IMG/VR virus record: IMGVR_UViG_3300020178_000002
Location: 124,001 to 188,000 of that record
Strand: one strand, 5' to 3'
DNA length: 64,000 nucleotides
Shown here: positions 22,213 to 60,802 of the stretch, piece after piece
Layout of the letters: the number at the start of each line of letters is the position of its first letter
Numbering within the stretch: position 1 is the first letter of the stretch
Position numbers and translations under genes: made by a program
Notes under the pieces: model-generated
Database searches by the model: none
What the model saw: only the letters and a program-made list of their open reading frames with translations
Told to the model about the DNA's origin: nothing

Positions 22213-23049
22213 ATGAACAAAATACAGAGATTAGAAGCAAGAGTAGCTAGGCTTGAAAAAGAGTCTTTTATTTCGGCTCAAAAAGTATGGGATACAGCAA
22301 ACAGCATACTCCCTCAATTAAACAGGCTTAAGGGTGCTGCGAAAGAGCTGATTAGACTAGTGACAGGTGCTATACGCAGTGTTTGGGCAGAGTTGAATTT
22401 AATAGTTCGCAAGAAGAACAAGAAGAAGATACTTGGTTATTTGGAAGCTTCTTTTGAAGAAACTATAAAGAATGCTTTCCAGCCATTTGTCTCGGTGTCA
22501 GAGCCACCAGAGCTTGTGGCATTCTTGCCAGGCAATCTATTAGGTTCTACTTTTAGGTTCAAGAATAGGAAGTATCAGCTTAAAGAGTTATTAAGGCATG
22601 ATGCTGTGACAGGTCAAGGTGCTTACAATGCATATAATGAGTGGGTCACAGAGTATGGGTTATACTTGGACTATATGATGGATAAGTACCCAAGACCAGA
22701 CAGCAAAGTGGGCAAGAAGGTTGTTTATCAGATGATGGAGAACCTGAAAATAGGGAGACTTAGCAAACTTGCTTGGAAGTTTTTTAACATTTGGATAAAG
22801 GTAAGTTCCCAGATTGGTTTAGTGGTTGGTTTAGCGACAGCTTTATCTGCACTTTCTTTAGCTGTGGGTGTGAGAGGGGCAGTGAAAACATTTACTACTC
22901 TCCTTAATAATAAGATAGACAAGGAGATAGGTAAGACAGACTTAGCTAGTAATCCTTTGTTTGACCCTAACAAGACAGCCTCTCAAAGGAAGCTTTCATC
23001 TTTAGCTTTAGTGACCTTAGTGTTAGAGGACATTCACTATTCTTATTAG
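22213..23049 (+). CDS. Leader-tagged protein, distant member of the 27.8-32.7 kb hydrophobic paralog family
   Basis: Leader MNKIQRLEARVARLEKES; AYNEWVTEY matches AYxSWxxDY; hydrophobic stretch; KTAS before a short C-terminal tail. Confidence 0.75.
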   Translation: MNKIQRLEARVARLEKESFISAQKVWDTANSILPQLNRLKGAAKELIRLVTGAIRSVWAELNLIVRKKNKKKILGYLEASFEETIKNAFQPFVSVSEPPELVAFLPGNLLGSTFRFKNRKYQLKELLRHDAVTGQGAYNAYNEWVTEYGLYLDYMMDKYPRPDSKVGKKVVYQMMENLKIGRLSKLAWKFFNIWIKVSSQIGLVVGLATALSALSLAVGVRGAVKTFTTLLNNKIDKEIGKTDLASNPLFDPNKTASQRKLSSLALVTLVLEDIHYSY

Positions 23050-23095
23050 TTTTTTTATTGTTGCCAATAGGCAGAATAAACTAAGGACAAGAGCC

Positions 23096-23431
23096 ATGAC
23101 ATCAGAGAACCAGAATAAAATGATAGAGTTGATATTCAAGATTTTGAGTGTCCTCGTAATTCCGTTTGGGGCATATATAATTTCAATGTCAACAGACATT
23201 AAGTTATTAGAGCAGAAGCTTCAATCTCAAGAAGAGAAAGTTTCCCAGATTATTTTAAAAGTAGAGAAGCTAGATAAAGATGTTGCAGAGGGTTGGAGCA
23301 ACATTAAGCTTAATACTCAAGAAGTACGACAGATGAAAGAGATGATCACAAATCAGTCTCAGATGGTTAGAGAAGTGTATGAGTATGTGCTGAGACAACA
23401 GGGGGGGAGAAGACAAGGCAGAGGAAACTAA
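23096..23431 (+). CDS. Membrane-anchored coiled-coil protein (possible lysis accessory)
   Basis: N-terminal TM (LIFKILSVLVIPFGAYII) followed by a heptad pattern. Confidence 0.6.
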   Translation: MTSENQNKMIELIFKILSVLVIPFGAYIISMSTDIKLLEQKLQSQEEKVSQIILKVEKLDKDVAEGWSNIKLNTQEVRQMKEMITNQSQMVREVYEYVLRQQGGRRQGRGN

Positions 23432-23432
23432 A

Positions 23433-23768
23433 ATGAAAAAGTTCCTCATATTGTCTCTTAGTCTAACTTTATTAATGTGCATTGCTGGTTTAAAAGCTCA
23501 GAGAGTAGAAAAAAAAGAAATTAAGTTGCTTGAATCTCAGGTTGAGGTGGTAGATATAAAGAAGAACCGAGAGGTTGAATCTTTAATGTATGAAACCCAA
23601 GCATTGATGAAAGAAACTTGTAAGCTTCATCAACTGCTTATAAAGGAAAAGACCAATGAGCAACGAAAGTCAAACACCAGTAGAACCACAGAGCGTAGGC
23701 ACACTCACAGAGGAAGAAATGGGTATGATTGCCCAGCTTCGTCAAGCAGCCACCCAACTTCTAAATAA
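23433..23768 (+). CDS. Protein with N-terminal signal/anchor sequence
   Basis: MKKFLILSLSLTLLMCIAG; 3' part overlaps the next gene by about 110 nt. Confidence 0.55.
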   Translation: MKKFLILSLSLTLLMCIAGLKAQRVEKKEIKLLESQVEVVDIKKNREVESLMYETQALMKETCKLHQLLIKEKTNEQRKSNTSRTTERRHTHRGRNGYDCPASSSSHPTSK

Positions 23769-23961
23769 TCTTGGTCAGCTTGAGCTTCGTAAGAGCCAGA
23801 TTGTAGCTCAACTTCAGAGAAATGAGGGGCAAGCCCAACAAATTCTTGTTGATGCTAAGAATCGTTTAGGTATTCCAGAGGGTGCTGCTTGGCAAGTACA
23901 AGAGAATGGTGAAGTTCTCGCTGTGATGCCTTCTGAAGAGGAGACTAGCACAGAGGGCTAA
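23656..23961 (+). CDS. Small coiled-coil hypothetical protein
   Basis: 101 aa, AAGGA SD, followed by a terminator. Confidence 0.75.
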   Translation: MSNESQTPVEPQSVGTLTEEEMGMIAQLRQAATQLLNNLGQLELRKSQIVAQLQRNEGQAQQILVDAKNRLGIPEGAAWQVQENGEVLAVMPSEEETSTEG

Positions 23962-23992
23962 TACTTTAATTGACCCTTTTATCTAGTGTTTT

Positions 23993-24035
23993 AAGAGCTC
24001 TATTGCCATCATGTTGGTAGTAGAGCTTTTTTTTT
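23993..24035 (+). terminator. Intrinsic terminator
   Basis: AAGAGCTCTATTGCCA / TGGTAGTAGAGCTTTT stem plus T run. Confidence 0.85.
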
Positions 24036-24072
24036 GTTTATTGATAGCCTTCTTATAAGATAAAGAAAGGCT

Positions 24073-24597: not shown

Positions 24598-24606
24598 GGT
24601 ATTAGT

Positions 24607-25977: not shown

Positions 25978-25986
25978 GAGAATAAA

Positions 25987-26799
25987 ATGAAAAGAACAAT
26001 AAGAGAACTTGAATCTAGGATTGCTAGACTCGAGAAACATTCATCAAAGAAAACTGCTATGAAGATAATTCACAGAGAGTTGATAGAATACCTGAAAAAG
26101 AAAAATCTTAAGAATGTGGGTAAGAGTGAGCCACTAGAATATGGTGGGCTATCGAGAAAAATAGGATTTGAATTTACGCTTATCCTTAACGACAATGAAT
26201 ACGAGGAGATGACTAAGTTCTTCAATAAGAATAAAAAATATAATAATGAGATAGTCATCAACGATGATGCTGTTGACGACATTATTGAACACCATTTAGA
26301 TGAAGACGAATACTTTGCACCTAGTAATGCTAGATACTCAGGGGGTAGTCCTTTTTGCATTCTTTCCCTATATAAAAATGGGTTGTTTACTCTTACAGTC
26401 GAAATGACTGTTCATAAGAAAAAAACTCCAAAGATTCCTACACCCCTTCAAAAGATTAACTTAGGGATAGGGAAAACTGTTTTTGATATCAAGAAATTGA
26501 CAACAGACTTGTGGATGCTTTTAAAAGACCAAATTGCATTCAAGCTAGAATCAATGGGTAGGGAAGAAGAAGAGCTAGAAGACCTTGCAAATCAGTATAT
26601 GATGAAAGTCCGTTTAGTTATGGATGCTGATGGGTTCTATTTTTTAAGGGTTAAGTCAGGAAGAAATCACTATATTCTTGACATGGAAGACACAGAAAAA
26701 CATGAGATTACAAACTCCAGAGGAAGATACACACAGAAAGCTCTAGAAAGACACCTAGACTTAAACTATGACGACTACACAAGATGGAAAGTAAAATGA
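25987..26799 (+). CDS. Leader-tagged hypothetical protein
   Basis: MKRTIRELESRIARLEKHSSKKTA leader; AGGAG SD. Confidence 0.8.
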   Translation: MKRTIRELESRIARLEKHSSKKTAMKIIHRELIEYLKKKNLKNVGKSEPLEYGGLSRKIGFEFTLILNDNEYEEMTKFFNKNKKYNNEIVINDDAVDDIIEHHLDEDEYFAPSNARYSGGSPFCILSLYKNGLFTLTVEMTVHKKKTPKIPTPLQKINLGIGKTVFDIKKLTTDLWMLLKDQIAFKLESMGREEEELEDLANQYMMKVRLVMDADGFYFLRVKSGRNHYILDMEDTEKHEITNSRGRYTQKALERHLDLNYDDYTRWKVK

Positions 26800-27230
26800 A
26801 AAGAACAGCACATGAAATAATTAGAAGTCTTGAACTTAGAGTAGCTAGACTTGAGAAGCAATCATCACATACAACATATAAGTTAAGTCCAGTTAGACCT
26901 GGACTTAAGAAGTACTTAGAAAATAAACTTAAGAGCATCCTTAGCGAAAGTGGCTATGGTGAAGATTCTTTTGAGGGGGTTGACAGAGTATTTCTTCAGT
27001 GGGATTTAGGAAATAGCTGGGGTGCAGATAACTACTTTGCAATTGGAGTAGACTCAGGTGCAGATACCTTTAGACTTATTTTGGATGATCATAAACCCAG
27101 TGACTTTGGAGATATAGATCCTTATGATGGAGATCCCAGAGGGCCTATTGATTGGACTCCTAAAAAAGTAAACCAAACTAAGCTAATGGATGCACTAGAA
27201 GAATACGATAATGATCTTTGGGAGATCTGA
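26796..27230 (+). CDS. Leader-tagged hypothetical protein
   Basis: Start moved to ATG 26796 (ATGA overlap); MKRTAHEIIRSLELRVARLEKQSS. Confidence 0.8.
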   Translation: MKRTAHEIIRSLELRVARLEKQSSHTTYKLSPVRPGLKKYLENKLKSILSESGYGEDSFEGVDRVFLQWDLGNSWGADNYFAIGVDSGADTFRLILDDHKPSDFGDIDPYDGDPRGPIDWTPKKVNQTKLMDALEEYDNDLWEI

Positions 27231-27846: not shown

Positions 27847-28947
27847 ATGAATAAAGTATCTGCACAGCAAATCAGATCTCTTGAGGTCAGAATAGCTAGG
27901 CTTGAAAAAGAAGCTGGCTTTCAAGAGTTTATGGAAAGTGTCTCTAGTACATTTAAAAGCATAGTTAACATTCCTAAAAACATGGTGATTAGGATAATAA
28001 ATGCTTTTAAAGAAATTTTTACAACTGTAGAACTGTCATTAGAAGACGAAGAAAAAACAATTGAAAATGCACTTGGCTTTTTATTGGGTTCTCGCATCTT
28101 TAGAGCAATGGCTGGAGTCATAACAACAACAGATGATTTGCCTACGATTGTTAAATTCAATAGGAAGCAGCCTTTAAAGTCTACATTCACGGGTGGGCTT
28201 GCAGGAAAGGCTAAGGTTCAATTAAAGAACCTTATTAAGCGTTATAATGAAACAAACCAGACAAGAATGAAGTCTGCCTATCTTTCATGGTATTCAGATT
28301 TCAAGCACATCCTAAACCCAAAAATTAAAGAAGTTGAGGGTGTTGAATTTGCACTTCGAGAAATCAAGAAGGTCTCAAAGTTAGCATATAGGTTCTTGTC
28401 TTCAATCATCTCTGTATTAGGTGGTGTTGTTGCTATTAAAGGGACAGTGATCTCAACTCTGCTATTTATACTAGGTAGGATCTTTTTGCAGAAGTATGGT
28501 TTTCCAGTAGGAAGACCTAGTGAATGGACTCAAAATGAAGTTGTTTTTTCAAAGGTCACTGTTGAACCCGTAAATGCTACTATACATAGGAATGTAATAG
28601 ACGTTACCAGAGATAGATATAGTGATTATAAGAAACTTTCTCCTATACAAAAGCAGATTTTTGTTGAAAAAATACATGCTAAGGTAGAACAACACCCAAT
28701 GAAAAATTGGCAACCAGATTCAGCAGCTAACCTTCAAGATGTTAAGGATTGGATTAGATGGAAGCCTATTCAGTTTACCACAGCAATCTTGACACCTATT
28801 TTAGCACTCATTGAAACAATTATGTACAAGTGGGTGATTAAGACAGACGAATATGATGAAATGGTAAAAGAGCTAGAATCAAGAAATAAGAAAGCTTCTC
28901 AATACCCAACACTCTCTTATTTAACTCAGATTTTAGAAGGCAGGTGA
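27847..28947 (+). CDS. Leader-tagged hydrophobic paralog 1
   Basis: MNKVSAQQIRSLEVRIARLEKEAG; STFTGG; two hydrophobic segments; KKASQYP tail. Confidence 0.85.
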   Translation: MNKVSAQQIRSLEVRIARLEKEAGFQEFMESVSSTFKSIVNIPKNMVIRIINAFKEIFTTVELSLEDEEKTIENALGFLLGSRIFRAMAGVITTTDDLPTIVKFNRKQPLKSTFTGGLAGKAKVQLKNLIKRYNETNQTRMKSAYLSWYSDFKHILNPKIKEVEGVEFALREIKKVSKLAYRFLSSIISVLGGVVAIKGTVISTLLFILGRIFLQKYGFPVGRPSEWTQNEVVFSKVTVEPVNATIHRNVIDVTRDRYSDYKKLSPIQKQIFVEKIHAKVEQHPMKNWQPDSAANLQDVKDWIRWKPIQFTTAILTPILALIETIMYKWVIKTDEYDEMVKELESRNKKASQYPTLSYLTQILEGR

Positions 28948-28950
28948 GAC

Positions 28951-30051
28951 ATGAATAAGGTATCAGCACAACAAATTAGATCTCTTGAGCTTAGGATAGC
29001 TAGGCTTGAAAAAGAGGCTGGCTTTATAGATGATATGGTAGGTGTCTTTAAAAAGACACTCAACATACCTAAGAATATGTTCTTAAAGATACTTTATGCC
29101 TTCAAAGAAGTTTATGATGATGTTGTTGTATGGAACACAGAATCAGAATCTAAGGCTATGGATTCATTAGGTGCATTATTGGGCATAAGAATATTTAGAT
29201 CTTTAGCTGGTGTTATAACTACAAGTGAGGGTTTACCTAAAATTGTCAAGTTCAACTACTCTGACCCTTTAAGCTCAACCTTCACAGGTGGACTTGCAAT
29301 GAAGTCTAATATCCCTCTTAAGAAGCTTATCAATATGTATGAGGGTGAGAACCAGACCAGAATGAAGAGAGCTTACACTTCATGGTATGCAGACTATAAA
29401 GAAATCATAAACCCTTCTGTCTCTGATAGAGAAGCGATTGATATTTTCTTAGATCTTTGTAAAAGAGGTGGGAAGTGGCTCTATCGCTTAATGACTGCCC
29501 TTATAGGTTTGGTTGGTATAGCGACTCTTAAGTCCACAGTCATATTCAACATCATTATTATGGTTGTACAGAGATATGTGCAGATAGGGATGTTTGATTT
29601 TCGAAATATGGATAAGAGAATTCTGGACTTCCAAGAAACAACAGTAAAGTATATAGACATAAAATCTGTTAAGTATCTTGAAGCAGAGGGTGTTATTGAA
29701 AACACTCACAAATTCATATCTGATGTTCTGGTTGGTGGGAGAGGGTATGTTCCTCGAAAAGAAGTAAAGGAATTTACTCTCGCTATTGTTGAAAAGCCCT
29801 TGCAGAAATACCAACCTATTGATTTTGTGTCTTGGAAAAAAGTTAGAGAGTACATGACACAAAACTACACTACCTTTATTGGTGTTTTCCTAACAGGATT
29901 CTTAGCTCTACTTGAGAAAGCACTTTATAAATGGGTCTTTAAAACAGAAGACTATGAAAAGATGAAAGCTGAAAGTGATGCAATGGGCAAGACAGCTTCT
30001 AAATACCCTGCAATTGCTTATATGGCTAGAAAGCTAGAAAGCTATTTATGA
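28951..30051 (+). CDS. Leader-tagged hydrophobic paralog 2
   Basis: Same leader; STFTGG; KTASKYP tail. Confidence 0.85.
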   Translation: MNKVSAQQIRSLELRIARLEKEAGFIDDMVGVFKKTLNIPKNMFLKILYAFKEVYDDVVVWNTESESKAMDSLGALLGIRIFRSLAGVITTSEGLPKIVKFNYSDPLSSTFTGGLAMKSNIPLKKLINMYEGENQTRMKRAYTSWYADYKEIINPSVSDREAIDIFLDLCKRGGKWLYRLMTALIGLVGIATLKSTVIFNIIIMVVQRYVQIGMFDFRNMDKRILDFQETTVKYIDIKSVKYLEAEGVIENTHKFISDVLVGGRGYVPRKEVKEFTLAIVEKPLQKYQPIDFVSWKKVREYMTQNYTTFIGVFLTGFLALLEKALYKWVFKTEDYEKMKAESDAMGKTASKYPAIAYMARKLESYL

Positions 30052-30632
30052 TATACTCGCTTCAATGTACCTACTCAAATGGCATAAGAATAAACTCTTT
30101 AAATATATCACTTGCTAATGGACAGTCTTTCGATTGCCCAAAGCAAACATATGATACTAATAAAGAAATCCAAGCTCTGGTGTCCTCTGGTATGTTGAAG
30201 CTAAAAGTAAAAGAACACAAGTCTGGCCTTAGAGCGAACTCTAATAAACGAGTTTTACGAAGCAACCCGACTAATGAGAGAGTTGTAGAGAGAGTTGTAG
30301 AGAGAGTTGTTGAATCCCCAATAGACATGGATGCAATCACTAGGAATGTAGTTGAGCAAATAGGTGCTGTACTATCTCCTGAGATATTGGCTCAAGCAAT
30401 TGCAGCACAACTCCCTACTGTCCAAGCTAATTACCCACAGAAAAATGAGGGTAATAGTTCTTTTATGTCTTCTAGTGAAGACAATCTAATGTTTATCCCC
30501 TCTACTATTGTAGATAGAAATACTGTTGCTTCTAAATCCTCTGCCTCTGAAAGCATATCGGAAGACTCTGATGGTCTTGCTGATGCTATGGCTGCTTTAA
30601 AAGCAATGAAAAAGAAGAAAGGTCAAACCTAA
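30048..30632 (+). CDS. Hypothetical protein with ERVV x3 repeat
   Basis: 194 aa, overlapping both neighbours; 12-bp coding repeat GAGAGAGTTGTA. Confidence 0.75.
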   Translation: MIYSLQCTYSNGIRINSLNISLANGQSFDCPKQTYDTNKEIQALVSSGMLKLKVKEHKSGLRANSNKRVLRSNPTNERVVERVVERVVESPIDMDAITRNVVEQIGAVLSPEILAQAIAAQLPTVQANYPQKNEGNSSFMSSSEDNLMFIPSTIVDRNTVASKSSASESISEDSDGLADAMAALKAMKKKKGQT

Positions 30633-31564
30633 TGAATAAAGTATCTGCACAGCAAATCAGATCTCTTGAAATGAGAATTGCCAGACTCGAAAGAGAGGCT
30701 GGTCTTAAAGAAATCTTTGATGACATCTCTGGATTTGTTAAAGGTGTTGTTAACATTCCTAAAAACTTCATCAAGAAAATCATCAATGTTTTCAAAGATG
30801 TTGGAAACAACCTAACTGTCCTTCTTTCAAAACAAGAAGATAGGATTGTTAGAGCCCTTAAATCTGCATTGGGAATCCGAGTAGCTGCGACTCTTGAAGG
30901 CTTTGTTATAGATACTAGAGATCTTCCTATCATTGTAGACTTTAATCTTATGAATCCTATTAAGTCTACTTTCACAGGTGGCAATGCAGGATCTTCAAAA
31001 GTATCTTTGGACAAGTTGGCATCTCTCTATGATGGAGAAGAAGCTAGAAGAATTAAGTCAGCTTTCCTTTCATGGAAATCAGACTACCTTCCTTCTTTAA
31101 ATGCATTACAAGGAAAAGATGATGTTGGAGTTATTAAGGGCTTTCTAAAACTGATACAAAGGTCATCTAAACTGCTTTACAGATTCTTGAAGATTGCTCT
31201 AAGCATATTCAGCATTGCCCAGCTTATTGCAGCACCTTGGGGATCTTGGGTTTTAGGTTTAGCTATGGTCTTCATAGGGAATCATAATATGTTGCCTATA
31301 TCAGCCGACTATACTCTTCTAACAGATAAGAGTCTAGCTAATATTATGGATGCCAAAGACTTCTTACCTCGTAATGAAGTTCCATTGTTGAAATCTTTTG
31401 GTCCTGCTATTATCACTACTGTTCTTAAGATTCTTGAAAAAGCATTCTATCGCTATGGTGTTAATGTTGATGCCTTTGACGAGGAATCTATGGGTAGAAC
31501 AGCTTCTCAATTCCCAAGAGTTGCTTCTGTAACTAGAAGACTCGAACACTACGCTTACGCTTAA
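30632..31564 (+). CDS. Leader-tagged hydrophobic paralog 3
   Basis: Same leader; STFTGG; RTASQFPRVAS tail. Confidence 0.85.
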   Translation: MNKVSAQQIRSLEMRIARLEREAGLKEIFDDISGFVKGVVNIPKNFIKKIINVFKDVGNNLTVLLSKQEDRIVRALKSALGIRVAATLEGFVIDTRDLPIIVDFNLMNPIKSTFTGGNAGSSKVSLDKLASLYDGEEARRIKSAFLSWKSDYLPSLNALQGKDDVGVIKGFLKLIQRSSKLLYRFLKIALSIFSIAQLIAAPWGSWVLGLAMVFIGNHNMLPISADYTLLTDKSLANIMDAKDFLPRNEVPLLKSFGPAIITTVLKILEKAFYRYGVNVDAFDEESMGRTASQFPRVASVTRRLEHYAYA

Positions 31565-31615
31565 TATCTTATTTATCATTAGCTTCCTGTGAAAAAAACA
31601 CAGGGGGCTGATGAT

Positions 31616-31747
31616 ATGACAAGATACCAGATGAAAAGATTAGAGATGAGGATTTCCAGAAAACTCGAAAGGAAGTCCAAACTTCAACTTCAGCGTATCT
31701 ATCAGAGATTAGCTTCTTTAGAAAAAGAGGTTAAATCCAATGAATAA
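31616..31747 (+). CDS. 43-aa peptide made of two leader-like motifs (not in the ORF track)
   Basis: MTRYQMKRLEMRISRKLERKSKLQLQRIYQRLASLEKEVKSNE; AGGGGG SD; own TA-N5-TTTAT motif. Confidence 0.65.
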   Translation: MTRYQMKRLEMRISRKLERKSKLQLQRIYQRLASLEKEVKSNE

Positions 31748-32669
31748 AGTATCTGCACAGCAAATCAGATCTCTTGAAATGAGAATAGCTAGACTTGAAA
31801 GAGAAGCTAGCTTTCAAGATGTTTTGGATGACATCAGTGGTTTTGTTAAAGGTGTTGTTAATATCCCTAAGAACTTTATTAAAAACATCATCAATGTTTT
31901 GAAGGATGTAGGTAACAACCTTAAAGCAACTTTTGCTGAACAGCGTGAAGTTATTTGTGAAGCCCTAGAGTCTGCATTGGGAATCCGAGTAGCTGCTACT
32001 CTACAAAACTTTATTGTAGATACCAGAGACATGCCTGTTATCGTTGAGCTCAATGTAATGAACCCAATCAAGTCGATATTCACAGGTGGTAAAGCTGGTT
32101 CTTCAAAGTATGCTCTTGATAAGCTGGCATCTCTTTATGACCGTGAAAGGTCTAAAAGAATCAAGTCTGCATACCTCTCTTGGAAGTCAGACTACTCTTC
32201 TCAAATAGATATTCTTCAAGGAAAATTTGATGAGTCTAACTCTGTTAAAAGATTAATGAAGTTTCTTCAAAGAAGCTCTAAGGTTGCTTATAGATTTTTC
32301 AAAGTTCTTTTCAGCATAGTCTCTATGACAGAGGTTATTGCAGCACCTTGGGGCTCTTGGATTATTGACCTAGCAACAATTACAGTAGGGTCACTTGATC
32401 TAATACCATTTTTACCAAAAGAGTCATGGACTCTTAGTAAAGTTGAAAGTATCACTGGTTTATCTTTCACTACCAATACCCTGAGTAAAAGTGTGGTCAA
32501 GACAATCCCTGCTACAATAGTCACCTCTGTTCTTAAGCTTCTTGAAAAAGCATTCTATCGCTATGGTGTTAATGTTGACGCTTTTGACGAGGAATCTATG
32601 GGTAGAACAGCTTCTCAATTCCCAAGAGTTGCTTCTATAACTAGAAGACTTGAAAACTATATCCTTTAG
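31740..32669 (+). CDS. Leader-tagged hydrophobic paralog 4
   Basis: Same leader; close paralog of 30632..31564 with a near-identical 3' end. Confidence 0.85.
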   Translation: MNKVSAQQIRSLEMRIARLEREASFQDVLDDISGFVKGVVNIPKNFIKNIINVLKDVGNNLKATFAEQREVICEALESALGIRVAATLQNFIVDTRDMPVIVELNVMNPIKSIFTGGKAGSSKYALDKLASLYDRERSKRIKSAYLSWKSDYSSQIDILQGKFDESNSVKRLMKFLQRSSKVAYRFFKVLFSIVSMTEVIAAPWGSWIIDLATITVGSLDLIPFLPKESWTLSKVESITGLSFTTNTLSKSVVKTIPATIVTSVLKLLEKAFYRYGVNVDAFDEESMGRTASQFPRVASITRRLENYIL

Positions 32670-32683: not shown

Positions 32684-33091
32684 ATGAATAAAGTATCTGC
32701 ACAGCAAATCAGATCTCTTGAAATGAGAATAGCTAGACTCGAAAGAGAGGCTGGTCTTATAGACCATTTCTATAAATCTCCATACAAAGAAAAACTAAGC
32801 CCTGAAGATATAATAAAAGGCTTTATTAAAGTTTTTAATCGTGCTTGTAGACATGGAAGTGTTATGTCTATCTACTCAGACCCATATGAAAATGATTTCA
32901 TCCTTACCTTGAGACTTAACATCGGGATTGTAAAAATAAAAGTTTCTATAGATGGGGAATTGATAGAGGTCTATAAAAATGATGGTGCTGTATACACAAG
33001 GCTTATGGCATCTTTTGAATACAAAGATATTAAAAAGGGAATGGTCAAGGTTGTTAAAGCCCTTGAAGCTAAATCTATTTACTATGTATAA
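32684..33091 (+). CDS. Leader-tagged hypothetical protein with unrelated body
   Basis: Identical MNKVSAQQIRSLEMRIARLEREAG leader, then no visible similarity to paralogs 1-4. Confidence 0.8.
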   Translation: MNKVSAQQIRSLEMRIARLEREAGLIDHFYKSPYKEKLSPEDIIKGFIKVFNRACRHGSVMSIYSDPYENDFILTLRLNIGIVKIKVSIDGELIEVYKNDGAVYTRLMASFEYKDIKKGMVKVVKALEAKSIYYV

Positions 33092-52743: not shown

Positions 52744-52744
52744 G

Positions 52745-54133
52745 ATGGCATTTTTAAGGTACGCAAAAGCTAATGTAGTTCGCCCTCAAGTACACGGGCT
52801 AGATTGGGACAAAGTAAGAGTTGCTTCTGGTAATAGGCAACTAAACCAATCTTTAAAGAAAAAAGCTGAAGATATTCTAGGGGAGGCATTTACCCCAGAT
52901 AGATTTCTTTTAACACATGCTACTATCGTATGTTCTGTAGATTCTGTAACGCCTCCAAATACAAAAACAGGATCTATTAAAGAAGGTGGCTTTACTATAA
53001 ACAGAAAGTATTCTGATTACAGAATCTCAAAGGAGACTGACAAGTATATTAATAATAACCTAGACTCATGGTCTAGAGGTGTTATTAAAAGATCTTATCA
53101 GACTTTCATAGGTTCTCATAACTTTGTAGAGCATGTTCAAGTAGAAGAGCTTTCTAAGGGCAAAATCATTGATGCTGTTTTAAGAGACATTGGTGAAAGC
53201 CTCTATGTAGATATTCTAGTAGCTACTGATAGGAAACACAAAGACCTTGTAGAGCAGATTCTCTCTGGCCAGATGAACTCTATGTCTATGGGTTGTTCAG
53301 TCGATTTTACTATTTGTACTAAATGTGGTCACGTTGCAGCAGACGAAACTGAAATGTGTTCACATGTGAAGTATGAAAAAGGAAATACATTCTTTGATGA
53401 CCAAGGCAATAAGCACAGAGTTGCTGAGTTATGTGGTCACGAAGATGTGGGTGAGACTGCTGGTGTTACTTTTATTGAGGCTTCTTGGGTTGCAACTCCT
53501 GCTTTTCCAGGTGCGGTTGCTAGAAATACCATTGAAATACCCTCTTCTGATAACCCCTCAGAAGTTCCTTCAAAATGGGTAGATAAATCTGCAAGCCTTT
53601 CTTTAACTTCTGCTTTTGGAATGGAAGAAGAAGAAGAATCTGAAGAAGGTGGAGATAAAGAACCAGCAGACGAGTCTCTCCTTAAGAAGCTAGATTCAGT
53701 ATATGAGCAAGCTATCATAGACAGATTCAAGAATAAGCTTGAAACTGAGATGAAGAAAGAGAAAGCTCAAGAGAAACTCTATCCTCCCACAAGTCAATCT
53801 TCTGTAGCCCAGAACGACACTGTGATTAAAGAAGGAAAGAAAGTCTCAACCAGAGAGTATACTAAAGCATTAGATATTTCTGTAAAGACAGCTTCTAATT
53901 TAGAAGAAGCACTCTTTAACATTGCTTTAGTAAACAATCACTTTGGTGTCAGCATCCCTTCTCACCTTTATAAGATAGCCAGTAAGCTAGGAAGCACTTC
54001 TAAATATGCATCTGTTCAAGATTATATTGAGAAAGCTGTAAGCCTACATGGTAAAGCATTATCGGAGAAAGATTCTTTCATCTTAATTCGGTTAGCAAAA
54101 ATAACATCCCTTAACAACTTCGGGCAGAAATAA
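52745..54133 (+). CDS. Prohead maturation protease (HK97/herpes assemblin-like) with Zn-binding insertion
   Basis: Start moved to ATG 52745 (AAGGAG SD); NFVEH, GKIIDA, SMSMGC, CTKCGH...CSH, FIEASWVATPAFPGA; upstream of scaffold and capsid genes. Confidence 0.8.
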   Translation: MAFLRYAKANVVRPQVHGLDWDKVRVASGNRQLNQSLKKKAEDILGEAFTPDRFLLTHATIVCSVDSVTPPNTKTGSIKEGGFTINRKYSDYRISKETDKYINNNLDSWSRGVIKRSYQTFIGSHNFVEHVQVEELSKGKIIDAVLRDIGESLYVDILVATDRKHKDLVEQILSGQMNSMSMGCSVDFTICTKCGHVAADETEMCSHVKYEKGNTFFDDQGNKHRVAELCGHEDVGETAGVTFIEASWVATPAFPGAVARNTIEIPSSDNPSEVPSKWVDKSASLSLTSAFGMEEEEESEEGGDKEPADESLLKKLDSVYEQAIIDRFKNKLETEMKKEKAQEKLYPPTSQSSVAQNDTVIKEGKKVSTREYTKALDISVKTASNLEEALFNIALVNNHFGVSIPSHLYKIASKLGSTSKYASVQDYIEKAVSLHGKALSEKDSFILIRLAKITSLNNFGQK

Positions 54134-54169
54134 AGTCTTGCCCTCTACGATATGAAAGGACTATGCCTT

Positions 54170-55819
54170 ATGTCTAGGTATTCCCGTTCTAAGTCTCGCA
54201 TGACTTCAGCTCGAAAAAGTCGTGTTCGCAAAGCAACCTCATCAGTTCCAGGTTATGATAATCTAGGTTGGGATCACTTCGGTCACCCTGCTTCAGCAGA
54301 ACAACCAGATCTTGAAGAATATGGTATTGATTCTGATTTCGGTGAAGGTGTTCGCAAAGGTCCTTATGAGGACAGCCCTGCACCTGCTTCTTACTCATGG
54401 GAGCCTGATCACCCTGCACACTCAAAGAAAGCTCTAAAGAGTGCTATGGAGCGTAAAGCTGCTAAGTGCATTCGTATTGCTGAGTCTCGTCTTGGTAAGT
54501 TTGCTTCTCAACGTGAGATCGAAGATCTTGCACTTCGCTTCATGGATCTTCCTAACAGTGTAATCAACTCAAGAGTTGCTAGCATTGAAGACCCAATGGC
54601 TGAAGAAATTGATGCTATGCATGATATGTATGCAGAAGACATTGATCCAATGGCTGAAGAAGTCGAAGGTATGATGTACGCAGAAGACCCTATGGCTGAA
54701 GAGGTTGAAGGCATGATGTATGCTGAAGACCCTATGGCTGACCTTATGTATGACGACATGGATGACGACATGGGTATGATGGCAGACCTTATGGATGACT
54801 CTATGGATGATTCTATGGATATGATGGCAGACCTTATGGATGACTCTATGGATGATTCTATGGATATGATGGCAGACCTTATGGATGATTCTATTGATGA
54901 CGACATGGATATGATGGCTGACCTTATGGATGATGACATGGGTGATTCTATTGATGACGACATGGGTATGATGGCTGAAAGTCTTTTCGCTATGGAGCAT
55001 GACGCTATGGAGCATGACGCTATGGAGCATGGCATGTTTGCAAGCATTGATGAGCCTGTAGCAGACGACATGGGCGACATCATGGCAGACTTGTTTGGAG
55101 AAGAAACTGAGAGTGAAGCTGATATCCTAGCTGACGAAGTTGCTAGTCTTAAAGCTGCAAATGCCAGACTAGCTCGCAAAGTAAGAAATCTTAGCAGAAC
55201 TGTAAACGCTTCTAAAGCAGAGGAAGTAAAAGCAGAAGAGACTGAGGCAGAAGAAACTGAAAGCACCGAAGAGAAAGTAGCTCGTATCGAGAGACTTGCA
55301 AACGCTTTAGCTGACTACATGGCTGAGATGGAGCGTACTGCTGCTGAAGAGGAAGAAGCTAAAGAGGAAGAAGCTCCTAAAGAAGAAGCTAAAGAAGAAG
55401 CTCCTAAAGAGGAAGCTAAAGAAGAAGCTCCTGCTGAGAAGAAAGCTTATAACTCAATGGCAGATATTCTTGCAGAGCTTGAAGTAGAGAGTGAAGAAGT
55501 TGATCCTATGGCAGAAGAGCTTGAGCCTGTAGCTGAAGACCCAATGGGACTAGACAGTGTGGCTGACATGCAAATTGATGCTCGTCTTGCTTCTATCTTC
55601 ACTGCTGGTGAAGAAGGTGAAGTTGCAGAAGAAACTGAAGCAGAAGAAACTGAAGCAGAAGAAACTGATGCTGGTAAGAAAGCTTCATATCGCCCAAGCA
55701 CTCAAGCTCGTCAAGCATCTGTAAAGACTCTTGGAAACATCAGTCGTGAAGCTTCAAGCTCTGATGAACTCAGCAAGCTTTGGGAATCTGCTCCAGACGT
55801 AAGCAAATTCTTCGGTTAA
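54170..55819 (+). CDS. Capsid scaffold-like acidic protein with Met/Asp repeats
   Basis: Start moved to ATG 54170; highly acidic, low complexity, coiled coil; between protease and capsid genes. Confidence 0.75.
   Translation: MSRYSRSKSRMTSARKSRVRKATSSVPGYDNLGWDHFGHPASAEQPDLEEYGIDSDFGEGVRKGPYEDSPAPASYSWEPDHPAHSKKALKSAMERKAAKCIRIAESRLGKFASQREIEDLALRFMDLPNSVINSRVASIEDPMAEEIDAMHDMYAEDIDPMAEEVEGMMYAEDPMAEEVEGMMYAEDPMADLMYDDMDDDMGMMADLMDDSMDDSMDMMADLMDDSMDDSMDMMADLMDDSIDDDMDMMADLMDDDMGDSIDDDMGMMAESLFAMEHDAMEHDAMEHGMFASIDEPVADDMGDIMADLFGEETESEADILADEVASLKAANARLARKVRNLSRTVNASKAEEVKAEETEAEETESTEEKVARIERLANALADYMAEMERTAAEEEEAKEEEAPKEEAKEEAPKEEAKEEAPAEKKAYNSMADILAELEVESEEVDPMAEELEPVAEDPMGLDSVADMQIDARLASIFTAGEEGEVAEETEAEETEAEETDAGKKASYRPSTQARQASVKTLGNISREASSSDELSKLWESAPDVSKFFG
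54590..55030 (+). repeat. Coding tandem repeats (EDPMAEEVEGMMYA; 45-bp MADLMDDSMDDSMDM; 15-bp AMEHD)
   Basis: Exact 45-bp units at 54779-54823 and 54824-54868, plus degenerate copies. Confidence 0.9.
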
Positions 55820-56563: not shown

Positions 56564-57442
56564 ATGAGTAATACAGTTGATAATTCAGTAAAACAAAAGA
56601 TCATTAGCGACTACATCAAGACCCCTCAAGGTCGTGCAAAGCTAGCTGCTTCAATGACTCAACCTCTTCGTCTTCGCCGTGACTATACAAGCGTTGGTCG
56701 TAAGACCTTCCTTGTTGAGCAACTTCCTGATGGTGCGTTGCCTATTTACGACAAAGACCCAGACGTAACAGCTTTCGTAGTTGGTGAAGAAGGCGAGAAC
56801 ATTCTTGCTATCACCAAGCCTCGTCGTGTTATCTTCCCTCTCTTTGAGATTGCTTCTAACCCTGAGATTCCTTTAACTCAGATCAAGGAAAGACGCTTCG
56901 ATCTTATCGAGAGAGCACAGGATCTTGCTAGAGCACAAATTCAGGCTGCTGAAGACGAGCGTGTATTCGCTATTCTTGACGCAGTTGCAGCTAATGGTTT
57001 CGACAGCGTTTCTGGTCAAACCAATGCTGACATTCCTGTTATCGCTCCTCTTAATGGTGCTGTTCTTGCTGACGCATACAGCCTAATTGAGAGACATGAC
57101 CTTAGAGTTGCCCGTGTATTTATGAATGCTAGAGACTATGCTGACATTCGTAAGTTCGGTCGTGACATTCTCGATATCGAGAGTCAAGCAGCCCTTCTCA
57201 AGACAGGTCTACAAGCAACTCTTTGGGGTGCTCAAATCATCACAAGTCGTCTTGTTCCTGTTGGTACAGTTTATGTTTGTTGTGAGCCAGAAATGTTCGG
57301 TCGTATCCCTGTTCGTACAGAGTTGACTGTTCTTTCTGCTGACGATCCAAAAGCTCGTACAATCGGCTTCTCTTGCTTCGAGAATCTAGGTATCGGTGCT
57401 TATAACCCTCGTGGTCTTGCTAGACTTACTGTTACTCGCTAA
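56564..57442 (+). CDS. Major capsid protein (HK97 fold)
   Basis: 292 aa; PLFEIASNPEI...RRFDLIERAQ...IQAAEDERVF, VFMNARDYADIRK, LWGAQIITSRLVPVG; strongly biased codons; terminator follows. Confidence 0.88.
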   Translation: MSNTVDNSVKQKIISDYIKTPQGRAKLAASMTQPLRLRRDYTSVGRKTFLVEQLPDGALPIYDKDPDVTAFVVGEEGENILAITKPRRVIFPLFEIASNPEIPLTQIKERRFDLIERAQDLARAQIQAAEDERVFAILDAVAANGFDSVSGQTNADIPVIAPLNGAVLADAYSLIERHDLRVARVFMNARDYADIRKFGRDILDIESQAALLKTGLQATLWGAQIITSRLVPVGTVYVCCEPEMFGRIPVRTELTVLSADDPKARTIGFSCFENLGIGAYNPRGLARLTVTR

Positions 57443-58231: not shown

Positions 58232-58249
58232 CTTTAAGGAGATGACTCA

Positions 58250-58786: not shown

Positions 58787-58852
58787 AAAAAAGTACCCCC
58801 CTTTAATTAATCAGATAACAATAAGTATCTATTTTATTAAAGGAGAAAAATT

Positions 58853-59113
58853 ATGAATGAGAAGATTGTATTAAGTATTTTGTTTGTTCTAGGTATTGCA
58901 GCACTTGTCTATGGTCTTAATAGAGAGAGCCTTGAAAGTGCTGTAGGTGAGGACAAGACATACAGCATTAGCTGTGAAACCCCAAAGGGTTGGGTAGAGT
59001 ACAAGACCCACAGAAAACCTTTTGAAGCAAGTTGGAGGCGAGGTGGGGTTTGGTATTTTGAAACCCTAGAGGGTAAGAACATTACCTCTACCAAGTGTCA
59101 CAGCGAAGAATAA
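58853..59113 (+). CDS. Small membrane-anchored protein
   Basis: N-terminal TM; two Cys; AAGGAG SD; variant CCCCCC-N9-TCAGATAA upstream (58796-58818). Confidence 0.7.
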   Translation: MNEKIVLSILFVLGIAALVYGLNRESLESAVGEDKTYSISCETPKGWVEYKTHRKPFEASWRRGGVWYFETLEGKNITSTKCHSEE

Positions 59114-59198
59114 TAAGTTATCTCTCTAAAATAAGAAACCCCATAGGTTTTTTTGATAATAGGCTTATTAGCAGTCATTAATCAAAGGAGTGTAAAAG

Positions 59199-59765
59199 AT
59201 GAAGAAATCTGCAAATGAAATTATTCAAAATCTTGAAACCAGAGTAGCCCAGCTTGAAAAGAAGTCTGCTCGAAAGTTCTCCCTATCCGCAGACTACCAT
59301 TATGTGTTTAAGCGTAGTTATTATGCTAAGTCTGTAGAGCGAGTAGACCATTCTAAGGTTCTCTTTGAGGGCCCTAAAAAGAAGTTTATTCCTCAAGGTT
59401 GGTCATATGGAGTTGATGAGATCAATTCTTTTGTTGAGAGAGATTTGATTCAGGAGATTGGTAAGATCCAAAAAGAGATCGAGGAAGTTTTTTATGCAAG
59501 TGGAGTTGACCCAACAGAGTTAAGGGAAGATTTCGAGGACTCTGGCAACAAGTTTGAGTGGGTGTTGGTTGCTCAAGGTCGTGCGTATGAGGGAGAGGTT
59601 TTGAAACTCGCCTATGTACGCATTAAAGATAAGACCTACAACTTCTATGTAGCACCCTCAATCGAAATTAAGGTTCTCAACACAAAAGGCAGGGCTGTTA
59701 AGGCAAACTACATCCTTAATACCCTAGCATCCGAGCTAGGTATGAGAACTGTCCGTATCGGTTAA
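59199..59765 (+). CDS. Leader-tagged hypothetical protein
   Basis: MKKSANEIIQNLETRVAQLEKKSA; AAGGAG SD. Confidence 0.8.
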   Translation: MKKSANEIIQNLETRVAQLEKKSARKFSLSADYHYVFKRSYYAKSVERVDHSKVLFEGPKKKFIPQGWSYGVDEINSFVERDLIQEIGKIQKEIEEVFYASGVDPTELREDFEDSGNKFEWVLVAQGRAYEGEVLKLAYVRIKDKTYNFYVAPSIEIKVLNTKGRAVKANYILNTLASELGMRTVRIG

Positions 59766-59808
59766 GAACGTCTAGTAGGTTTGGACTATGAAAGTGGTCA
59801 GCTAAATT

Positions 59809-59847
59809 AAGCCCTGCTACCCTTATTGGGTGGTGGGGGTTTTTTTT
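59809..59847 (+). terminator. Intrinsic terminator (direct-repeat copy 1)
   Basis: AAGCCCTGCTACCC-TTATT-GGGTGGTGGGGGTTT plus T run. Confidence 0.85.
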
Positions 59848-59902
59848 GTTTGTTTATAGTCCTAGGTGTCGTGTACCCTCACCAATACCATAAGGATTAG
59901 CT

Positions 59903-60802
59903 ATGAGAAGAATAGCATCAGAAATACTCAGAGAATTAGAGATAAGAGTAGCCCATTTAGAGGGTATGAGCCAAGATGACATGAGAAAGTCTATTGAGGT
60001 TGTGATAGAAAAAACTCCATCAAAGGTAAGAATAGATTATGTTGAGTTCCCTAAAACCCAAGAAGAGTTTTTAGAGATAGAAGCAAAGAACTTACCTGTT
60101 GTTTTTTATAATTGCCCTCTTGGAACAGAGATGGCAAGCCGATTAGATTTATTTAAGTCAGGCTTTAATCCTGTTGTGCAAGCAAGGCTTGCAGACAGAA
60201 AAAGCAAAGATATTGGTGAGGAAGTAGATATTAATCTCAAAGACCTTTTAAGGTCAAATTTTAACAATGGTACTCGATATGTAGGAAAACAACGTCTTAT
60301 GAAAGTAGGTTTGAAAAAACTGTTGGGTGTCAATCTTTATGAGAGAGGTCAGATTCTAGATGGGATGGAGGTGAGTTCTGCAAATATGTGGTGTGGGCCT
60401 AAAGGTTGTATTACACCATTACACCTCGACACAATTAACAACTTAGCATGGAACATATACGGACAAAAAACATGGTTTTTAGTGAGCCCAGAAGATATGT
60501 ACCACAATGCTTACTTAGAGCCATTCAAAGAGCCTTATGAAGAAGACTACAAAGGTGATTGGGATAGGAATGATAATAAAAGATCCCCTACTTTTTCAAA
60601 GATGACAGGGAATCCTTTAAAAAGCTTCGATAAGTTCCCGAAAGCTAGGGATATAAAATACCACAAGGTTGTTTTTCGGGAAAATGAGATACTGTATCTT
60701 CCTGCCTATTGGGGGCATTATGTTAAGACCGACTCTGACTCTTTGATGATTAACCACTGGTATGATGAAGTGCCAATTATTCTTAGATCTGAAAGAAAAT
60801 AA
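59903..60802 (+). CDS. Leader-tagged JmjC/cupin Fe(II)-2-oxoglutarate oxygenase
   Basis: NMWCG...TPLHLD (HxD), GQKTW, ILYLPAYWGHYV (distal H), INHW; leader MRRIASEILRELEIRVAHLEG. Confidence 0.88.
   Translation: MRRIASEILRELEIRVAHLEGMSQDDMRKSIEVVIEKTPSKVRIDYVEFPKTQEEFLEIEAKNLPVVFYNCPLGTEMASRLDLFKSGFNPVVQARLADRKSKDIGEEVDINLKDLLRSNFNNGTRYVGKQRLMKVGLKKLLGVNLYERGQILDGMEVSSANMWCGPKGCITPLHLDTINNLAWNIYGQKTWFLVSPEDMYHNAYLEPFKEPYEEDYKGDWDRNDNKRSPTFSKMTGNPLKSFDKFPKARDIKYHKVVFRENEILYLPAYWGHYVKTDSDSLMINHWYDEVPIILRSERK

What the first reader, a model, noticed from the sequence alone, without database searches (positions are those of the whole stretch)
22213..60802. Portable coiled-coil tag on ~13 largely unrelated proteins: candidate capsid cargo-loading system
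Seen: the motif I-x-x-L-E-x-R-[IV]-A-[RQKH]-L-E, usually followed by [KR]-x-[AS], starts the proteins at 22213, 25987, 26796, 27847, 28951, 30632, 31740, 32684, 34523(-), 47055, 59199 and 59903. It also occurs internally in 38048..39163 (KIQELSNRIARLENMKAA). Apart from one five-member family, the bodies are unrelated in size and sequence, and one is a recognisable JmjC enzyme that does not normally carry such an extension. All lie in or around the morphogenesis region, and none is in the 10-22 kb accessory block. The scaffold has similar heptad segments (EVASLKAANARLARKV, EKVARIERLA). Established: T4 internal proteins use a short N-terminal capsid-targeting sequence removed by protease gp21, and phiKZ-like phages process many head proteins. 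Inference: the tag docks cargo on the scaffold core, is clipped at maturation, and the cargo is ejected into the host with the DNA.
Basis: partly seen in the sequence, partly recalled or inferred. Interest (0 to 1): 0.92.

Follow-up and report, generated by a model that had tools for sequence, protein, structure and literature searches.

The report
Shared N-terminal address tag, jumbo phage
An uncultured jumbo phage puts the same 24-residue helical tag on the start of at least 18 otherwise unrelated small proteins, which most likely marks them for loading into the phage head and trimming there, so the proteins this phage delivers with its DNA could be read from sequence.

Summary
Eleven ORFs in the window start with one tag, consensus in relatives M-R-R-S/T-A-S-E-I/V-I/L-R-x-L-E-x-R-I/V-A-R-L-E-K/R-Q-A/S. 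A profile scores them at 30-44 bits, and nothing else in six frames exceeds 14 bits. A twelfth copy is internal (38048-39163). The copy at 47055 is only a degenerate look-alike.

The window belongs to a 312-kb myophage distantly related to Bacillus phage G, and that contig carries at least 18 tagged genes. Among 1.84 billion cluster representatives, 1060 match, and 140 of the best 150 match at residue 1. Bodies are small (median 120 aa) and almost all unrelated. Conservation stops four residues after the invariant L-E. Internal half-sites keep only R-[IVT]-A-R-L-E-[KR]-Q-[AS]-S, which looks like a linear recognition or processing site.

Tagged genes sit just downstream of the major capsid gene in 26 of 45 relatives. 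A sister genome has no such tag but carries a different N-terminal tag on 11 unrelated proteins.

Best reading: a capsid-targeting propeptide working like the phage T4 one. Packaging, cleavage and ejection are inferred, not shown. The claimed scaffold similarity is not significant. I found no description of either tag in the literature.

The parts
22213..23049 (+). Tagged ORF, 278 aa (tag 22213-22269). Distant member of the paralog family; basic, with one TM-like segment.
   Evidence: HMM 30.6 bits; BLAST E 2e-4 to 27847; pI 9.8
25987..26799 (+). Tagged ORF, 270 aa (tag 25987-26046). Body of unknown family.
   Evidence: HMM 32.6 bits; no Pfam or PHROG match
26796..27230 (+). Tagged ORF, 144 aa (tag 26796-26867). 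Acidic body. Its start overlaps the stop of the upstream gene.
   Evidence: HMM 44.3 bits; pI 4.5
27847..28947 (+). Tagged paralog 1, 366 aa (tag 27847-27918). Basic, with TM-like segments and a conserved C-terminal motif G-[RK]-T-A-S...L-E.
28951..30051 (+). Tagged paralog 2, 366 aa (tag 28951-29022).
30632..31564 (+). Tagged paralog 3, 310 aa (tag 30632-30703).
31740..32669 (+). Tagged paralog 4, 309 aa (tag 31740-31811).
32684..33091 (+). Tagged ORF, 135 aa (tag 32684-32755). Its first 25 residues are identical to those of 30632, but the body is unrelated.
34230..34523 (-). Tagged ORF, 97 aa, on the minus strand (tag 34452-34523).
   Evidence: HMM 37.3 bits
38048..39163 (-). 371-aa ORF with an internal tag copy (residues about 105-127, 38783-38851). 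A 269-aa homolog carries the motif at its N-terminus, so a domain of about 100 aa was added upstream here.
47055..47525 (+). 156-aa ORF with a degenerate look-alike N-terminus (L-R-N-L-F-L-R-V-A-K-L-E-A-A-S). Membership is uncertain.
   Evidence: 6.8 and 11.5 bits; its ortholog is equally degenerate
59199..59765 (+). Tagged ORF, 188 aa (tag 59199-59270), 1.8 kb downstream of the capsid gene.
   Evidence: HMM 39.6 bits
59903..60802 (+). Tagged Cupin_8/JmjC-type hydroxylase, 299 aa (tag 59903-59974).
   Evidence: HMM 37.8 bits; Pfam PF13621 E 2.8e-22
52745..54133 (+). Predicted prohead (head maturation) protease, 462 aa. Protease domain about residues 4-264, then an acidic linker and a helical C-terminal domain. 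It is the candidate enzyme that trims the tag.
   Evidence: PHROG 18299 E 1.6e-16; hhalign probability 100% to Tunturi_5 gp331, annotated head maturation protease; 1683 homologs
54152..55819 (+). Candidate scaffold, 555 aa, extremely acidic and D/M/E-rich. Two conserved central helices (L-K-A-A-N-A-R-L-A-R-K-V-R and I-E-R-L-A-x-A-L-x-x-Y-M). It is the candidate docking partner; this is inferred.
   Evidence: position between protease and capsid genes; helices conserved in 59 of 80 related loci and absent in LR745208.1
55964..56545 (+). Protein of about 193 aa just upstream of the capsid gene, where phage G encodes its capsid decoration protein. Context only.
   Evidence: gene order as in phage G; 55% identity to the LR745208.1 counterpart
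56564..57442 (+). Major capsid protein, 292 aa. It anchors the head module next to which tagged genes cluster.
   Evidence: PHROG 2522 E 8.5e-51; 38% identity to the phage G protein annotated major head protein

Best explanation
The tag is a portable N-terminal address and propeptide. It has two parts. The first 13 residues or so (M-R-R-S-A-S-E-I-I-R-N-L-E in relatives) occur only at protein starts. Together with the following residues they form a 2.5-heptad amphipathic helix. The second part is a 10-residue linear core, R-[IV]-A-R-L-E-[KR]-Q-[AS]-S. I propose that late in infection the tag docks each tagged protein onto one phage-encoded receptor inside the assembling prohead. The most likely receptor is the acidic scaffold core. 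The prohead protease (52745-54133) then cuts at or just after the invariant L-E. The tag-free cargo stays in the head and enters the host with the DNA. The cargo consists of small proteins, about half basic and a third acidic, and includes a JmjC hydroxylase, pentapeptide-repeat proteins, a WGR protein and a family of TM-like paralogs. Shown here: the tag exists, is under peptide-level selection, is bound to the N-terminus, is portable across at least 70 unrelated body families, is restricted to one clade, and clusters beside the capsid gene. Inferred: the destination (head), the receptor (scaffold), the cleavage and the ejection.
For: (1) In the window, 11 N-terminal copies score 30-44 bits and nothing else exceeds 14 bits. 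(2) Codons inside the tag vary synonymously. (3) Related contigs give 100 distinct tagged proteins. 95 of them have the tag 0-4 residues after the Met, and the 93 bodies of 70 aa or more form 70 BLAST clusters. (4) 1060 clusters at 50% identity match at E<=1e-3, and 140 of the best 150 match at residue 1. (5) Information content is 2-4.3 bits per position from -19 to +3, 1.1 bits at +4, and under 0.5 bits from +5. 23 internal half-sites keep only positions -5 to +4, some in clearly non-helical context such as G-Y-G-R-T-A-R-L-E-K-Q-S-S. That pattern fits a linear enzyme-recognition site. (6) The genome encodes a prohead protease homolog and an acidic scaffold directly upstream of the capsid gene. 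(7) A co-oriented tagged gene lies within 4 kb downstream of the capsid gene in 26 of 45 relatives and within 4 kb upstream in 0 of 48. 63 of 67 tags are co-oriented with the capsid gene, and the bodies at that position differ between relatives. (8) The sister genome LR745208.1 (capsid protein 89% identical) has no tag A (best 7.7 bits). It carries a different N-terminal tag on 11 mutually unrelated proteins. Its scaffold centre is different and its protease is only 42% identical. (9) Precedent: phage T4 internal proteins are diverse defence-countering proteins that share only a capsid targeting sequence, which puts them into the scaffolding core (PMC3012670). The giant phage SPN3US removes N-terminal propeptides of 20-254 residues after Glu (PMC10052503).
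Against: No virion proteomics exists for any member, so packaging, cleavage and ejection are untested. The scaffold, protease and capsid protein contain no copy of the core site. If the protease also degrades the scaffold, it must accept other sites. The protease shows no detectable similarity to T4 gp21 (hhalign probability 0.3%) and matches no Pfam, NCBIfam or PDB family. Its structure model was poor (pLDDT 49). Glu-specific cutting is therefore only an analogy. At least 7 tagged genes on the same contig lie among genes that do not look structural. The core [IV]-A-R-L-E fits neither the A-x-E rule reported for SPN3US nor, from my own knowledge, the T4 rule.
Confidence: 0.5

Rival explanations
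1. The tag is an address tag for a destination other than the head. It would dock its proteins onto another phage structure or compartment, such as the tail or baseplate, an intracellular assembly, or the filament of the actin-like protein encoded among the tagged genes.
For: Sequence alone does not name the receptor. Tagged genes also flank tail genes, and a Volactin-family gene (33152-34144, E 5e-74) sits between two tagged genes. At least 7 tagged genes lie outside structural regions. No head protein carries the core site.
Against: In relatives the strongest positional association is with the capsid gene (26 of 45 loci). The cargo is small and diverse, with enzymes and pentapeptide-repeat proteins, which resembles known internal head proteins more than tail parts. 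The processing-like core needs a protease, and the only one recognised in the window is the prohead protease.
Confidence: 0.2
2. The tag is a processing-only leader. A phage protease would remove it to activate or release the proteins in the cytoplasm, polyprotein-style, with no targeting role.
For: Internal half-sites lie between two domains in about 14 of the best 150 hits. Conservation has a sharp boundary at +4.
Against: A pure cleavage site does not explain the 13 extra residues conserved only at N-termini, with a fixed distance from the Met and an a/d heptad pattern. It also does not explain why a sister phage with a homologous protease uses a wholly different 28-residue tag.
Confidence: 0.12
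3. The tag is a generic short coiled coil that only dimerises or trimerises each protein, with no common partner.
For: The a/d heptad pattern is clean. The string R-I-A-R-L-E also occurs in papers on the Jun/Fos leucine zipper.
Against: Non-heptad positions (R at -5, A at -3, E at 0, +1 to +3) are as conserved as the core positions. 140 of the best 150 matches are at residue 1. Half-sites occur in non-helical context. Generic coiled coils in the window, including the 942-aa K/E-rich protein and the scaffold, do not match. An identical zipper on 18 proteins would in any case make them associate with each other.
Confidence: 0.08
4. The conservation lies in the nucleic acid: a shared translation-initiation region, a regulatory RNA element, or a recombination cassette boundary.
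For: The paralogs share nearly identical DNA in the tag. 32684 and 30632 share their first 25 codons before unrelated bodies, which suggests recombination within the tag.
Against: Synonymous variation occurs at nearly every codon among non-paralogous copies. The peptide is conserved across relatives whose loci range from 32% to 46% GC. Internal half-sites are conserved as peptide.
Confidence: 0.02

Closest known systems
Capsid targeting sequence (CTS) of phage T4 internal proteins, trimmed by prohead protease gp21
   Same: A short conserved N-terminal leader is the only thing shared by a diverse, fast-changing set of small proteins. In T4 it encapsidates them into the scaffolding core, and they act on the host after ejection (PMC3012670). 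Here too the leader ends in an invariant Glu, the genome has a prohead protease and a scaffold, and the cargo genes differ between relatives at a conserved locus.
   Different: The sequences are unrelated. This tag is about 24 residues with a heptad pattern. It occurs on at least 18 genes per genome and in over 1000 protein clusters. The protease has no detectable similarity to gp21. The capsid protein is a small one of 292 aa, of the phage G type. Nothing has been shown experimentally.
Propeptide processing of head and ejection proteins in phiKZ-like giant phages (SPN3US gp245)
   Same: Many head proteins carry N-terminal propeptides, two of them short (20 and 24 residues), and cleavage is after Glu. 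Abundant ejection proteins there include paralogs such as gp53 and gp54 (PMC10052503). Here the largest tagged group is a family of four paralogs with a distant fifth member.
   Different: In SPN3US no single shared leader sequence is reported, and most of its propeptides are long (111-254 residues). Its site rule is A-x-E, whereas the core here is [IV]-A-R-L-E-[KR]-Q-[AS]. [quoted passage not shown]
Cargo-loading peptides of encapsulins and encapsulation peptides of bacterial microcompartments (from my own knowledge)
   Same: A short terminal peptide followed by a flexible linker directs unrelated cargo into a protein shell.
   Different: To my knowledge those peptides bind the shell protein itself and are not removed. 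Here the capsid protein is 89% identical between genomes that use different tags, which argues against the shell as receptor. A processing-like core is also present.
N-terminal packing signals of extracellular contractile injection system payloads (from my own knowledge)
   Same: A transferable N-terminal signal on diverse effectors loads them into a phage-tail-like particle.
   Different: To my knowledge those signals are longer and disordered and load the tube lumen. Here the particle is a DNA-filled myophage. No test was possible.

Membership tests
T4-type capsid targeting sequence system | A short conserved N-terminal leader shared by otherwise unrelated proteins | tested here: met
   11 copies in the window. 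100 tagged proteins in relatives; the 93 bodies of 70 aa or more form 70 clusters. 140 of the best 150 global matches are at residue 1.
T4-type capsid targeting sequence system | The leader ends at a prohead-protease site and is removed | tested here: inconclusive
   Invariant L-E, a conservation boundary at +4, and 23 internal half-sites keeping only the core. There are no proteomic data, and the protease specificity is unknown.
T4-type capsid targeting sequence system | Tagged proteins are in the prohead core and virion and are ejected | not testable with these tools
   All members are uncultured. No record among 50,697 phage genomes carries the tag.
T4-type capsid targeting sequence system | Prohead protease and scaffolding core encoded with the capsid gene | tested here: met
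   PHROG 18299, hhalign probability 100% to Tunturi_5 gp331, and an acidic 555-aa protein between the protease and capsid genes.
T4-type capsid targeting sequence system | Homology of the machinery (protease of the gp21 family) | tested here: not met
   hhalign of the protease profile against T4 gp21 gives probability 0.3%. This is therefore an analogue at most, not a member.
phiKZ/SPN3US-type propeptide processing | Cleavage C-terminal to A-x-E | tested here: not met
   The core is [IV]-A-R-L-E. An A-S-E triplet is common at residues 5-7 in relatives (87% E) but absent from most window copies (PMC10052503).
Generic coiled coil / leucine zipper | Heptad a/d hydrophobic pattern with no positional or non-core constraint | tested here: not met
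   The heptad pattern is present. However, the position is fixed at the N-terminus, non-core residues are invariant, and other coiled coils in the window do not match.
Sec or Tat signal peptide | Hydrophobic h-region after the charged N-terminal region | tested here: not met
   The tag is charged throughout (R and E at most non-a/d positions) and has no hydrophobic stretch.
Encapsulin-type cargo-loading peptide | The peptide binds the inner face of the HK97-fold shell protein | not testable with these tools
   Indirect argument against: genomes that use different tags have capsid proteins 89% identical.

The most novel reading that the evidence does not exclude
Jumbo phages of this phage-G-related group use interchangeable, lineage-specific N-terminal address tags. 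There are at least two unrelated ones: tag A here, and tag B (M-T-T-L-R-S-K-L-I-R-L-A-H-E-N-P-A-L-R-P-Q-L-L-P-L-L-K-E-A) in LR745208.1. Each tag would mark a large, fast-turning-over set of proteins for packaging and co-injection. Tag A alone occurs in over 1000 protein clusters. The injected protein set of uncultured phages could then be listed directly from metagenomes, and the tag would be a ready-made handle for loading foreign proteins into large capsids.
Probability: 0.4. Interest if true: 0.9.

Novelty: new variant of a known kind. Interest (0 to 1): 0.78.

Why it matters
Which proteins a phage carries in its head and delivers with its DNA is normally learned only by mass spectrometry of purified virions, and that is impossible for uncultured phages. 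If this tag is a head-loading signal, the delivered set can be read from sequence. That would mean at least 18 genes in this genome and over 1000 protein clusters in public data, almost all of unknown function. The few with recognised domains are a JmjC hydroxylase, pentapeptide-repeat proteins (some members of that fold are known DNA mimics) and a WGR protein. It would give a large candidate list for early-acting and counter-defence proteins. It would also be a second, independent example of the principle found in phage T4. The sister lineage with a different tag offers a natural specificity-swap experiment for finding the receptor.

Tried and rejected
- Two short tag A queries (24 and 34 aa) run by tblastn against 50,697 phage records found nothing. 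The tag B query found only LR745208.1.
- Pfam and PHROGs gave no family for any tagged window protein except the JmjC one. The ten tag B proteins scanned had no significant Pfam match.
- The protease family stayed unresolved. phmmer and a profile search against PDB gave only low-complexity noise. Pfam and NCBIfam gave nothing. The AlphaFold model was poor (mean pLDDT 49; only the C-terminal helical domain was confident). The Foldseek search on it was therefore meaningless. hhalign against T4 gp21 was negative.
- Look-ups of contigs encoding two database hits returned only contigs of 2.6-2.8 kb.
- A de novo search for any shared N-terminal motif recovered tag A in the window. It found none in phage G 1-50 kb or in the Tunturi_5 structural 50 kb. 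Only part of each of those genomes was examined.
- Upstream regions show a recurrent T-T-T-G-T-T-T-A-T-A-G-like motif after terminator-like hairpins. It precedes tagged and untagged genes alike, so it does not discriminate.
- The scaffold segment V-A-R-I-E-R-L-A looked like the core by eye but scores under 8 bits.
- Tag B bodies have no homologs among tag A bodies or in the window, so no case of one cargo carrying either tag was found.
- The second structure job was not used. Only 16 relatives of the paralog family were available, too few for a reliable model, and single-chain models cannot test docking.

Full report
**What the window is.** The window is part of a 312-kb viral contig, IMGVR_UViG_3300020178_000002; locus L001 overlaps it exactly.
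- The contig encodes a 1603-aa protein whose C-terminal end is a tail-sheath domain (PHROG 2839).
- It has a head module in canonical order. First comes a predicted prohead protease (52745-54133, PHROG 18299). Next is a very acidic 555-aa scaffold-like protein (54152-55819), then a protein of about 193 aa at the position of phage G's decoration gene, then the 292-aa major capsid protein (56564-57442, PHROG 2522).
- The capsid protein is 38% identical to that of Bacillus phage G and 47% to that of Tunturiibacter phage Tunturi_5. It is 89% identical to that of the uncultured 485-kb genome LR745208.1.
- 574 viral contigs encode relatives of the capsid protein.
- The protease domain is clearly homologous to Tunturi_5 gp331, annotated head maturation protease (hhalign probability 100%).

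- A 24-column HMM scores these 11 at 30.6-44.3 bits.
- The internal copy in 38048-39163(-) scores 13.2 bits and 47055 scores 6.8 bits. Everything else scores at most 5.2 bits.
- A 10-residue core matrix gives 12 sites above 20 bits and 47055 at 11.5 bits. No other site in the window exceeds 8 bits. That includes the scaffold, the protease, the capsid protein and the long K/E-rich 942-aa protein.
- Codons inside the tag vary synonymously, so the conserved object is the peptide.
- With the tag removed, four ORFs are clear paralogs and 22213 is a distant fifth. The remaining bodies are unrelated.
- 59903 is a Cupin_8/JmjC protein.
- 47055 and its one ortholog share a degenerate form, so I treat it as a look-alike.
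- In a 269-aa homolog of the 38048-39163 protein the motif is N-terminal. The window protein has therefore gained a domain of about 100 aa upstream.

**How far the tag extends.**
- A degenerate DNA pattern for the motif found 54 stretches in 2.9 million viral contigs.
- With those and the capsid-gene loci, the HMM finds 100 distinct tagged proteins. 95 of them have the tag starting 0-4 residues after the Met.
- The 93 bodies of 70 aa or more fall into 70 BLAST clusters.
- The window's own contig has at least 18 canonical tagged genes, 7 of them outside the window, among genes that do not look structural. Two partial relatives have at least 15 each.
- A profile of 86 tags searched against 1.84 billion cluster representatives found 1060 proteins at E<=1e-3. 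140 of the best 150 match at residue 1. A few more start at residues 5-13, probably from miscalled starts. One is a repeat-protein false positive.
- Among the 93 tagged proteins, Pfam recognises only two pentapeptide-repeat proteins, two JmjC proteins and one WGR protein.
- Bodies are small (median 120 aa). 49% have pI above 8 and 37% below 6.
- No PHROG family and no record among 50,697 phage genomes carries the tag.
- Full-text searches for the motif strings found no phage paper.

**Anatomy of the tag.** Counting from the E of the final L-E as position 0:
- Information content is 2-4.3 bits per position from -19 (the Met) to +3.
- It is 1.1 bits at +4 and under 0.5 bits from +5 on.
- Hydrophobic residues at -15, -11, -8, -4 and -1 form a clean a/d heptad pattern.
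- R at -5, A at -3, E at 0 and K/R, Q, A/S at +1 to +3 are equally conserved.
- About 14 of the best 150 database proteins have a second, internal site, and 23 distinct internal sites were collected. These keep only R-[IVT]-A-R-L-E-[KR]-Q-[AS]-S. Several have a clearly non-helical upstream context.

So the tag has two parts: a segment of about 13 residues found only at N-termini, and a 10-residue linear core. A linear core conserved on both sides of an invariant Glu, followed by a polar variable linker, is what a protease recognition site looks like. A docking epitope cannot be excluded.

The paralog family also has an invariant motif at its very C-terminus, G-[RK]-T-A-S, then about 12 residues, then L-E, then 2-5 residues. 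Its role is unexplained.

**Link to the head.**
- In 26 of 45 related loci with enough sequence, a co-oriented tagged gene lies within 4 kb downstream of the capsid gene.
- In 0 of 48 does one lie within 4 kb upstream.
- 63 of 67 tags are co-oriented with the capsid gene.
- The bodies at that position differ from relative to relative. This recalls the diverse internal proteins of T-even phages, which share only their capsid targeting sequence (PMC3012670).

**A sister genome with a different tag.**
- LR745208.1 was scanned in ten pieces. It has no tag A (best 7.7 bits).
- Eleven of its proteins, 93-351 aa long, start with a different conserved 28-residue motif, here called tag B, and are scattered over the genome. 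In ten of them the motif begins 1-3 residues after the Met.
- Their bodies are unrelated to each other and to tag A bodies.
- Between the two genomes the capsid protein is 89% identical, but the protease is only 42% identical. The scaffold is alignable only at its ends.
- The two central scaffold helices conserved in 59 of 80 tag-A-clade loci are missing from the LR745208.1 scaffold.
- This argues that the receptor is not the capsid protein. It is compatible with the scaffold or the protease C-terminal domain, but it rests on a single tag-B-only genome.
- Tag-B-like motifs also occur on large proteins in some tag A relatives.

**Interpretation.** The shown facts establish a portable, N-terminus-specific, clade-restricted peptide tag with a processing-like core, genetically associated with the head module.
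- The most economical mechanism works like the phage T4 capsid targeting sequence. The tag docks cargo in the prohead core, the prohead protease trims it, and the cargo leaves with the DNA (PMC3012670).
- Giant phages such as SPN3US also remove N-terminal propeptides after Glu (PMC10052503).
- This is an analogy of mechanism, not membership. The protease has no detectable similarity to T4 gp21, and the core does not follow the A-x-E rule.
- Packaging, cleavage, receptor identity and ejection are all inferred. I put 0.5 on the head-loading model. I put about 0.85 on the weaker statement that this is an address or recognition tag read by one common phage-encoded partner.

**Limits.**
- The protease family and specificity could not be determined.
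- No head protein carries the core site.
- Several tagged genes lie far from structural genes.
- Only parts of the phage G and Tunturi_5 genomes were examined for tags of their own.

Noticed in passing
LR745208.1 (loci L137, L140-L149); also L033, L035, L036: A second, unrelated N-terminal tag (M-T-T-L-R-S-K-L-I-R-L-A-H-E-N-P-A-L-R-P-Q-L-L-P-L-L-K-E-A) starts 11 mutually unrelated proteins in this 485-kb sister genome, which has no tag A. A similar motif starts a 575-aa protein in some tag A relatives.
   Followed up: yes
L056, L058, L059 (ORFs of about 547 aa, 1-2 kb downstream of the capsid gene): Large proteins carry two or three tandem copies of a tag-B-like motif (L-I-K-V-A-Y-E-N-E-D-I-R-G-L-L-L-P...).
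   Followed up: no
window 33152-34144 (+): A phage-encoded actin-like protein matches Pfam Volactin (PF25216) over its full length (E 5e-74). It lies between two tagged genes.
   Followed up: no
window 27847-32669 and relatives (alignment A5): The tagged paralog family also has an invariant motif at the extreme C-terminus (G-[RK]-T-A-S, about 12 residues, L-E, then 2-5 residues). It may be a second site or docking helix and is unexplained.
   Followed up: partly
window 30632 and 32684: The first 25 residues are identical, with nearly identical DNA, before completely unrelated bodies. This suggests recombination within the tag that shuffles cargo.
   Followed up: partly
window 31583-31740 (+), between two paralogs: A short reading frame holds weak tag-like strings (M-K-R-L-E-M-R-I-S-R-K-L-E-R-K and R-L-A-S-L-E-K-E, 3-4 bits). 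It may be a decayed tag remnant.
   Followed up: no
window 56564-57442 compared with L069, L076, L010 and L137: The capsid protein stays 89-98% identical across loci whose GC content ranges from 32% to 55%. Between the window and LR745208.1 the protease is only 42% identical and the scaffold is barely alignable.
   Followed up: partly
window 185-9208 (-): A 3007-aa ORF has no Pfam match.
   Followed up: no
window 42187-46998 (+): A 1603-aa protein has a tail-sheath domain only in its last 330 residues or so. The first 1270 residues have no significant match.
   Followed up: no
window 60900-62267 (+): A type IB topoisomerase (Pfam eukaryotic topoisomerase I catalytic core, E 3.6e-17) lies directly after the tagged JmjC gene.
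   Followed up: no
window 54152-55819 (+): The scaffold-like protein has long Asp/Met-rich repeats (M-M-A-D-L-M-D-D-S-M-D-D-S-M-D) and repeated P-M-A-E-E units.
   Followed up: no
window, upstream of 22213, 24073, 49365, 57629, 59903 and 60900: A recurrent T-T-T-G-T-T-T-A-T-A-G-like motif follows terminator-like hairpins. It may be a promoter element shared by tagged and untagged genes.
   Followed up: no
window 58250-58786 and 58853-59113 (+): A protein with a signal-peptide-like start and a small protein with one hydrophobic segment lie between the capsid gene and the tagged genes.
   Followed up: no
window 35584-36393 (-) and 34578-35516 (-): An untagged pentapeptide-repeat protein and an ATP-dependent DNA ligase lie next to the tagged block. 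Pentapeptide-repeat proteins do carry the tag in relatives.
   Followed up: partly
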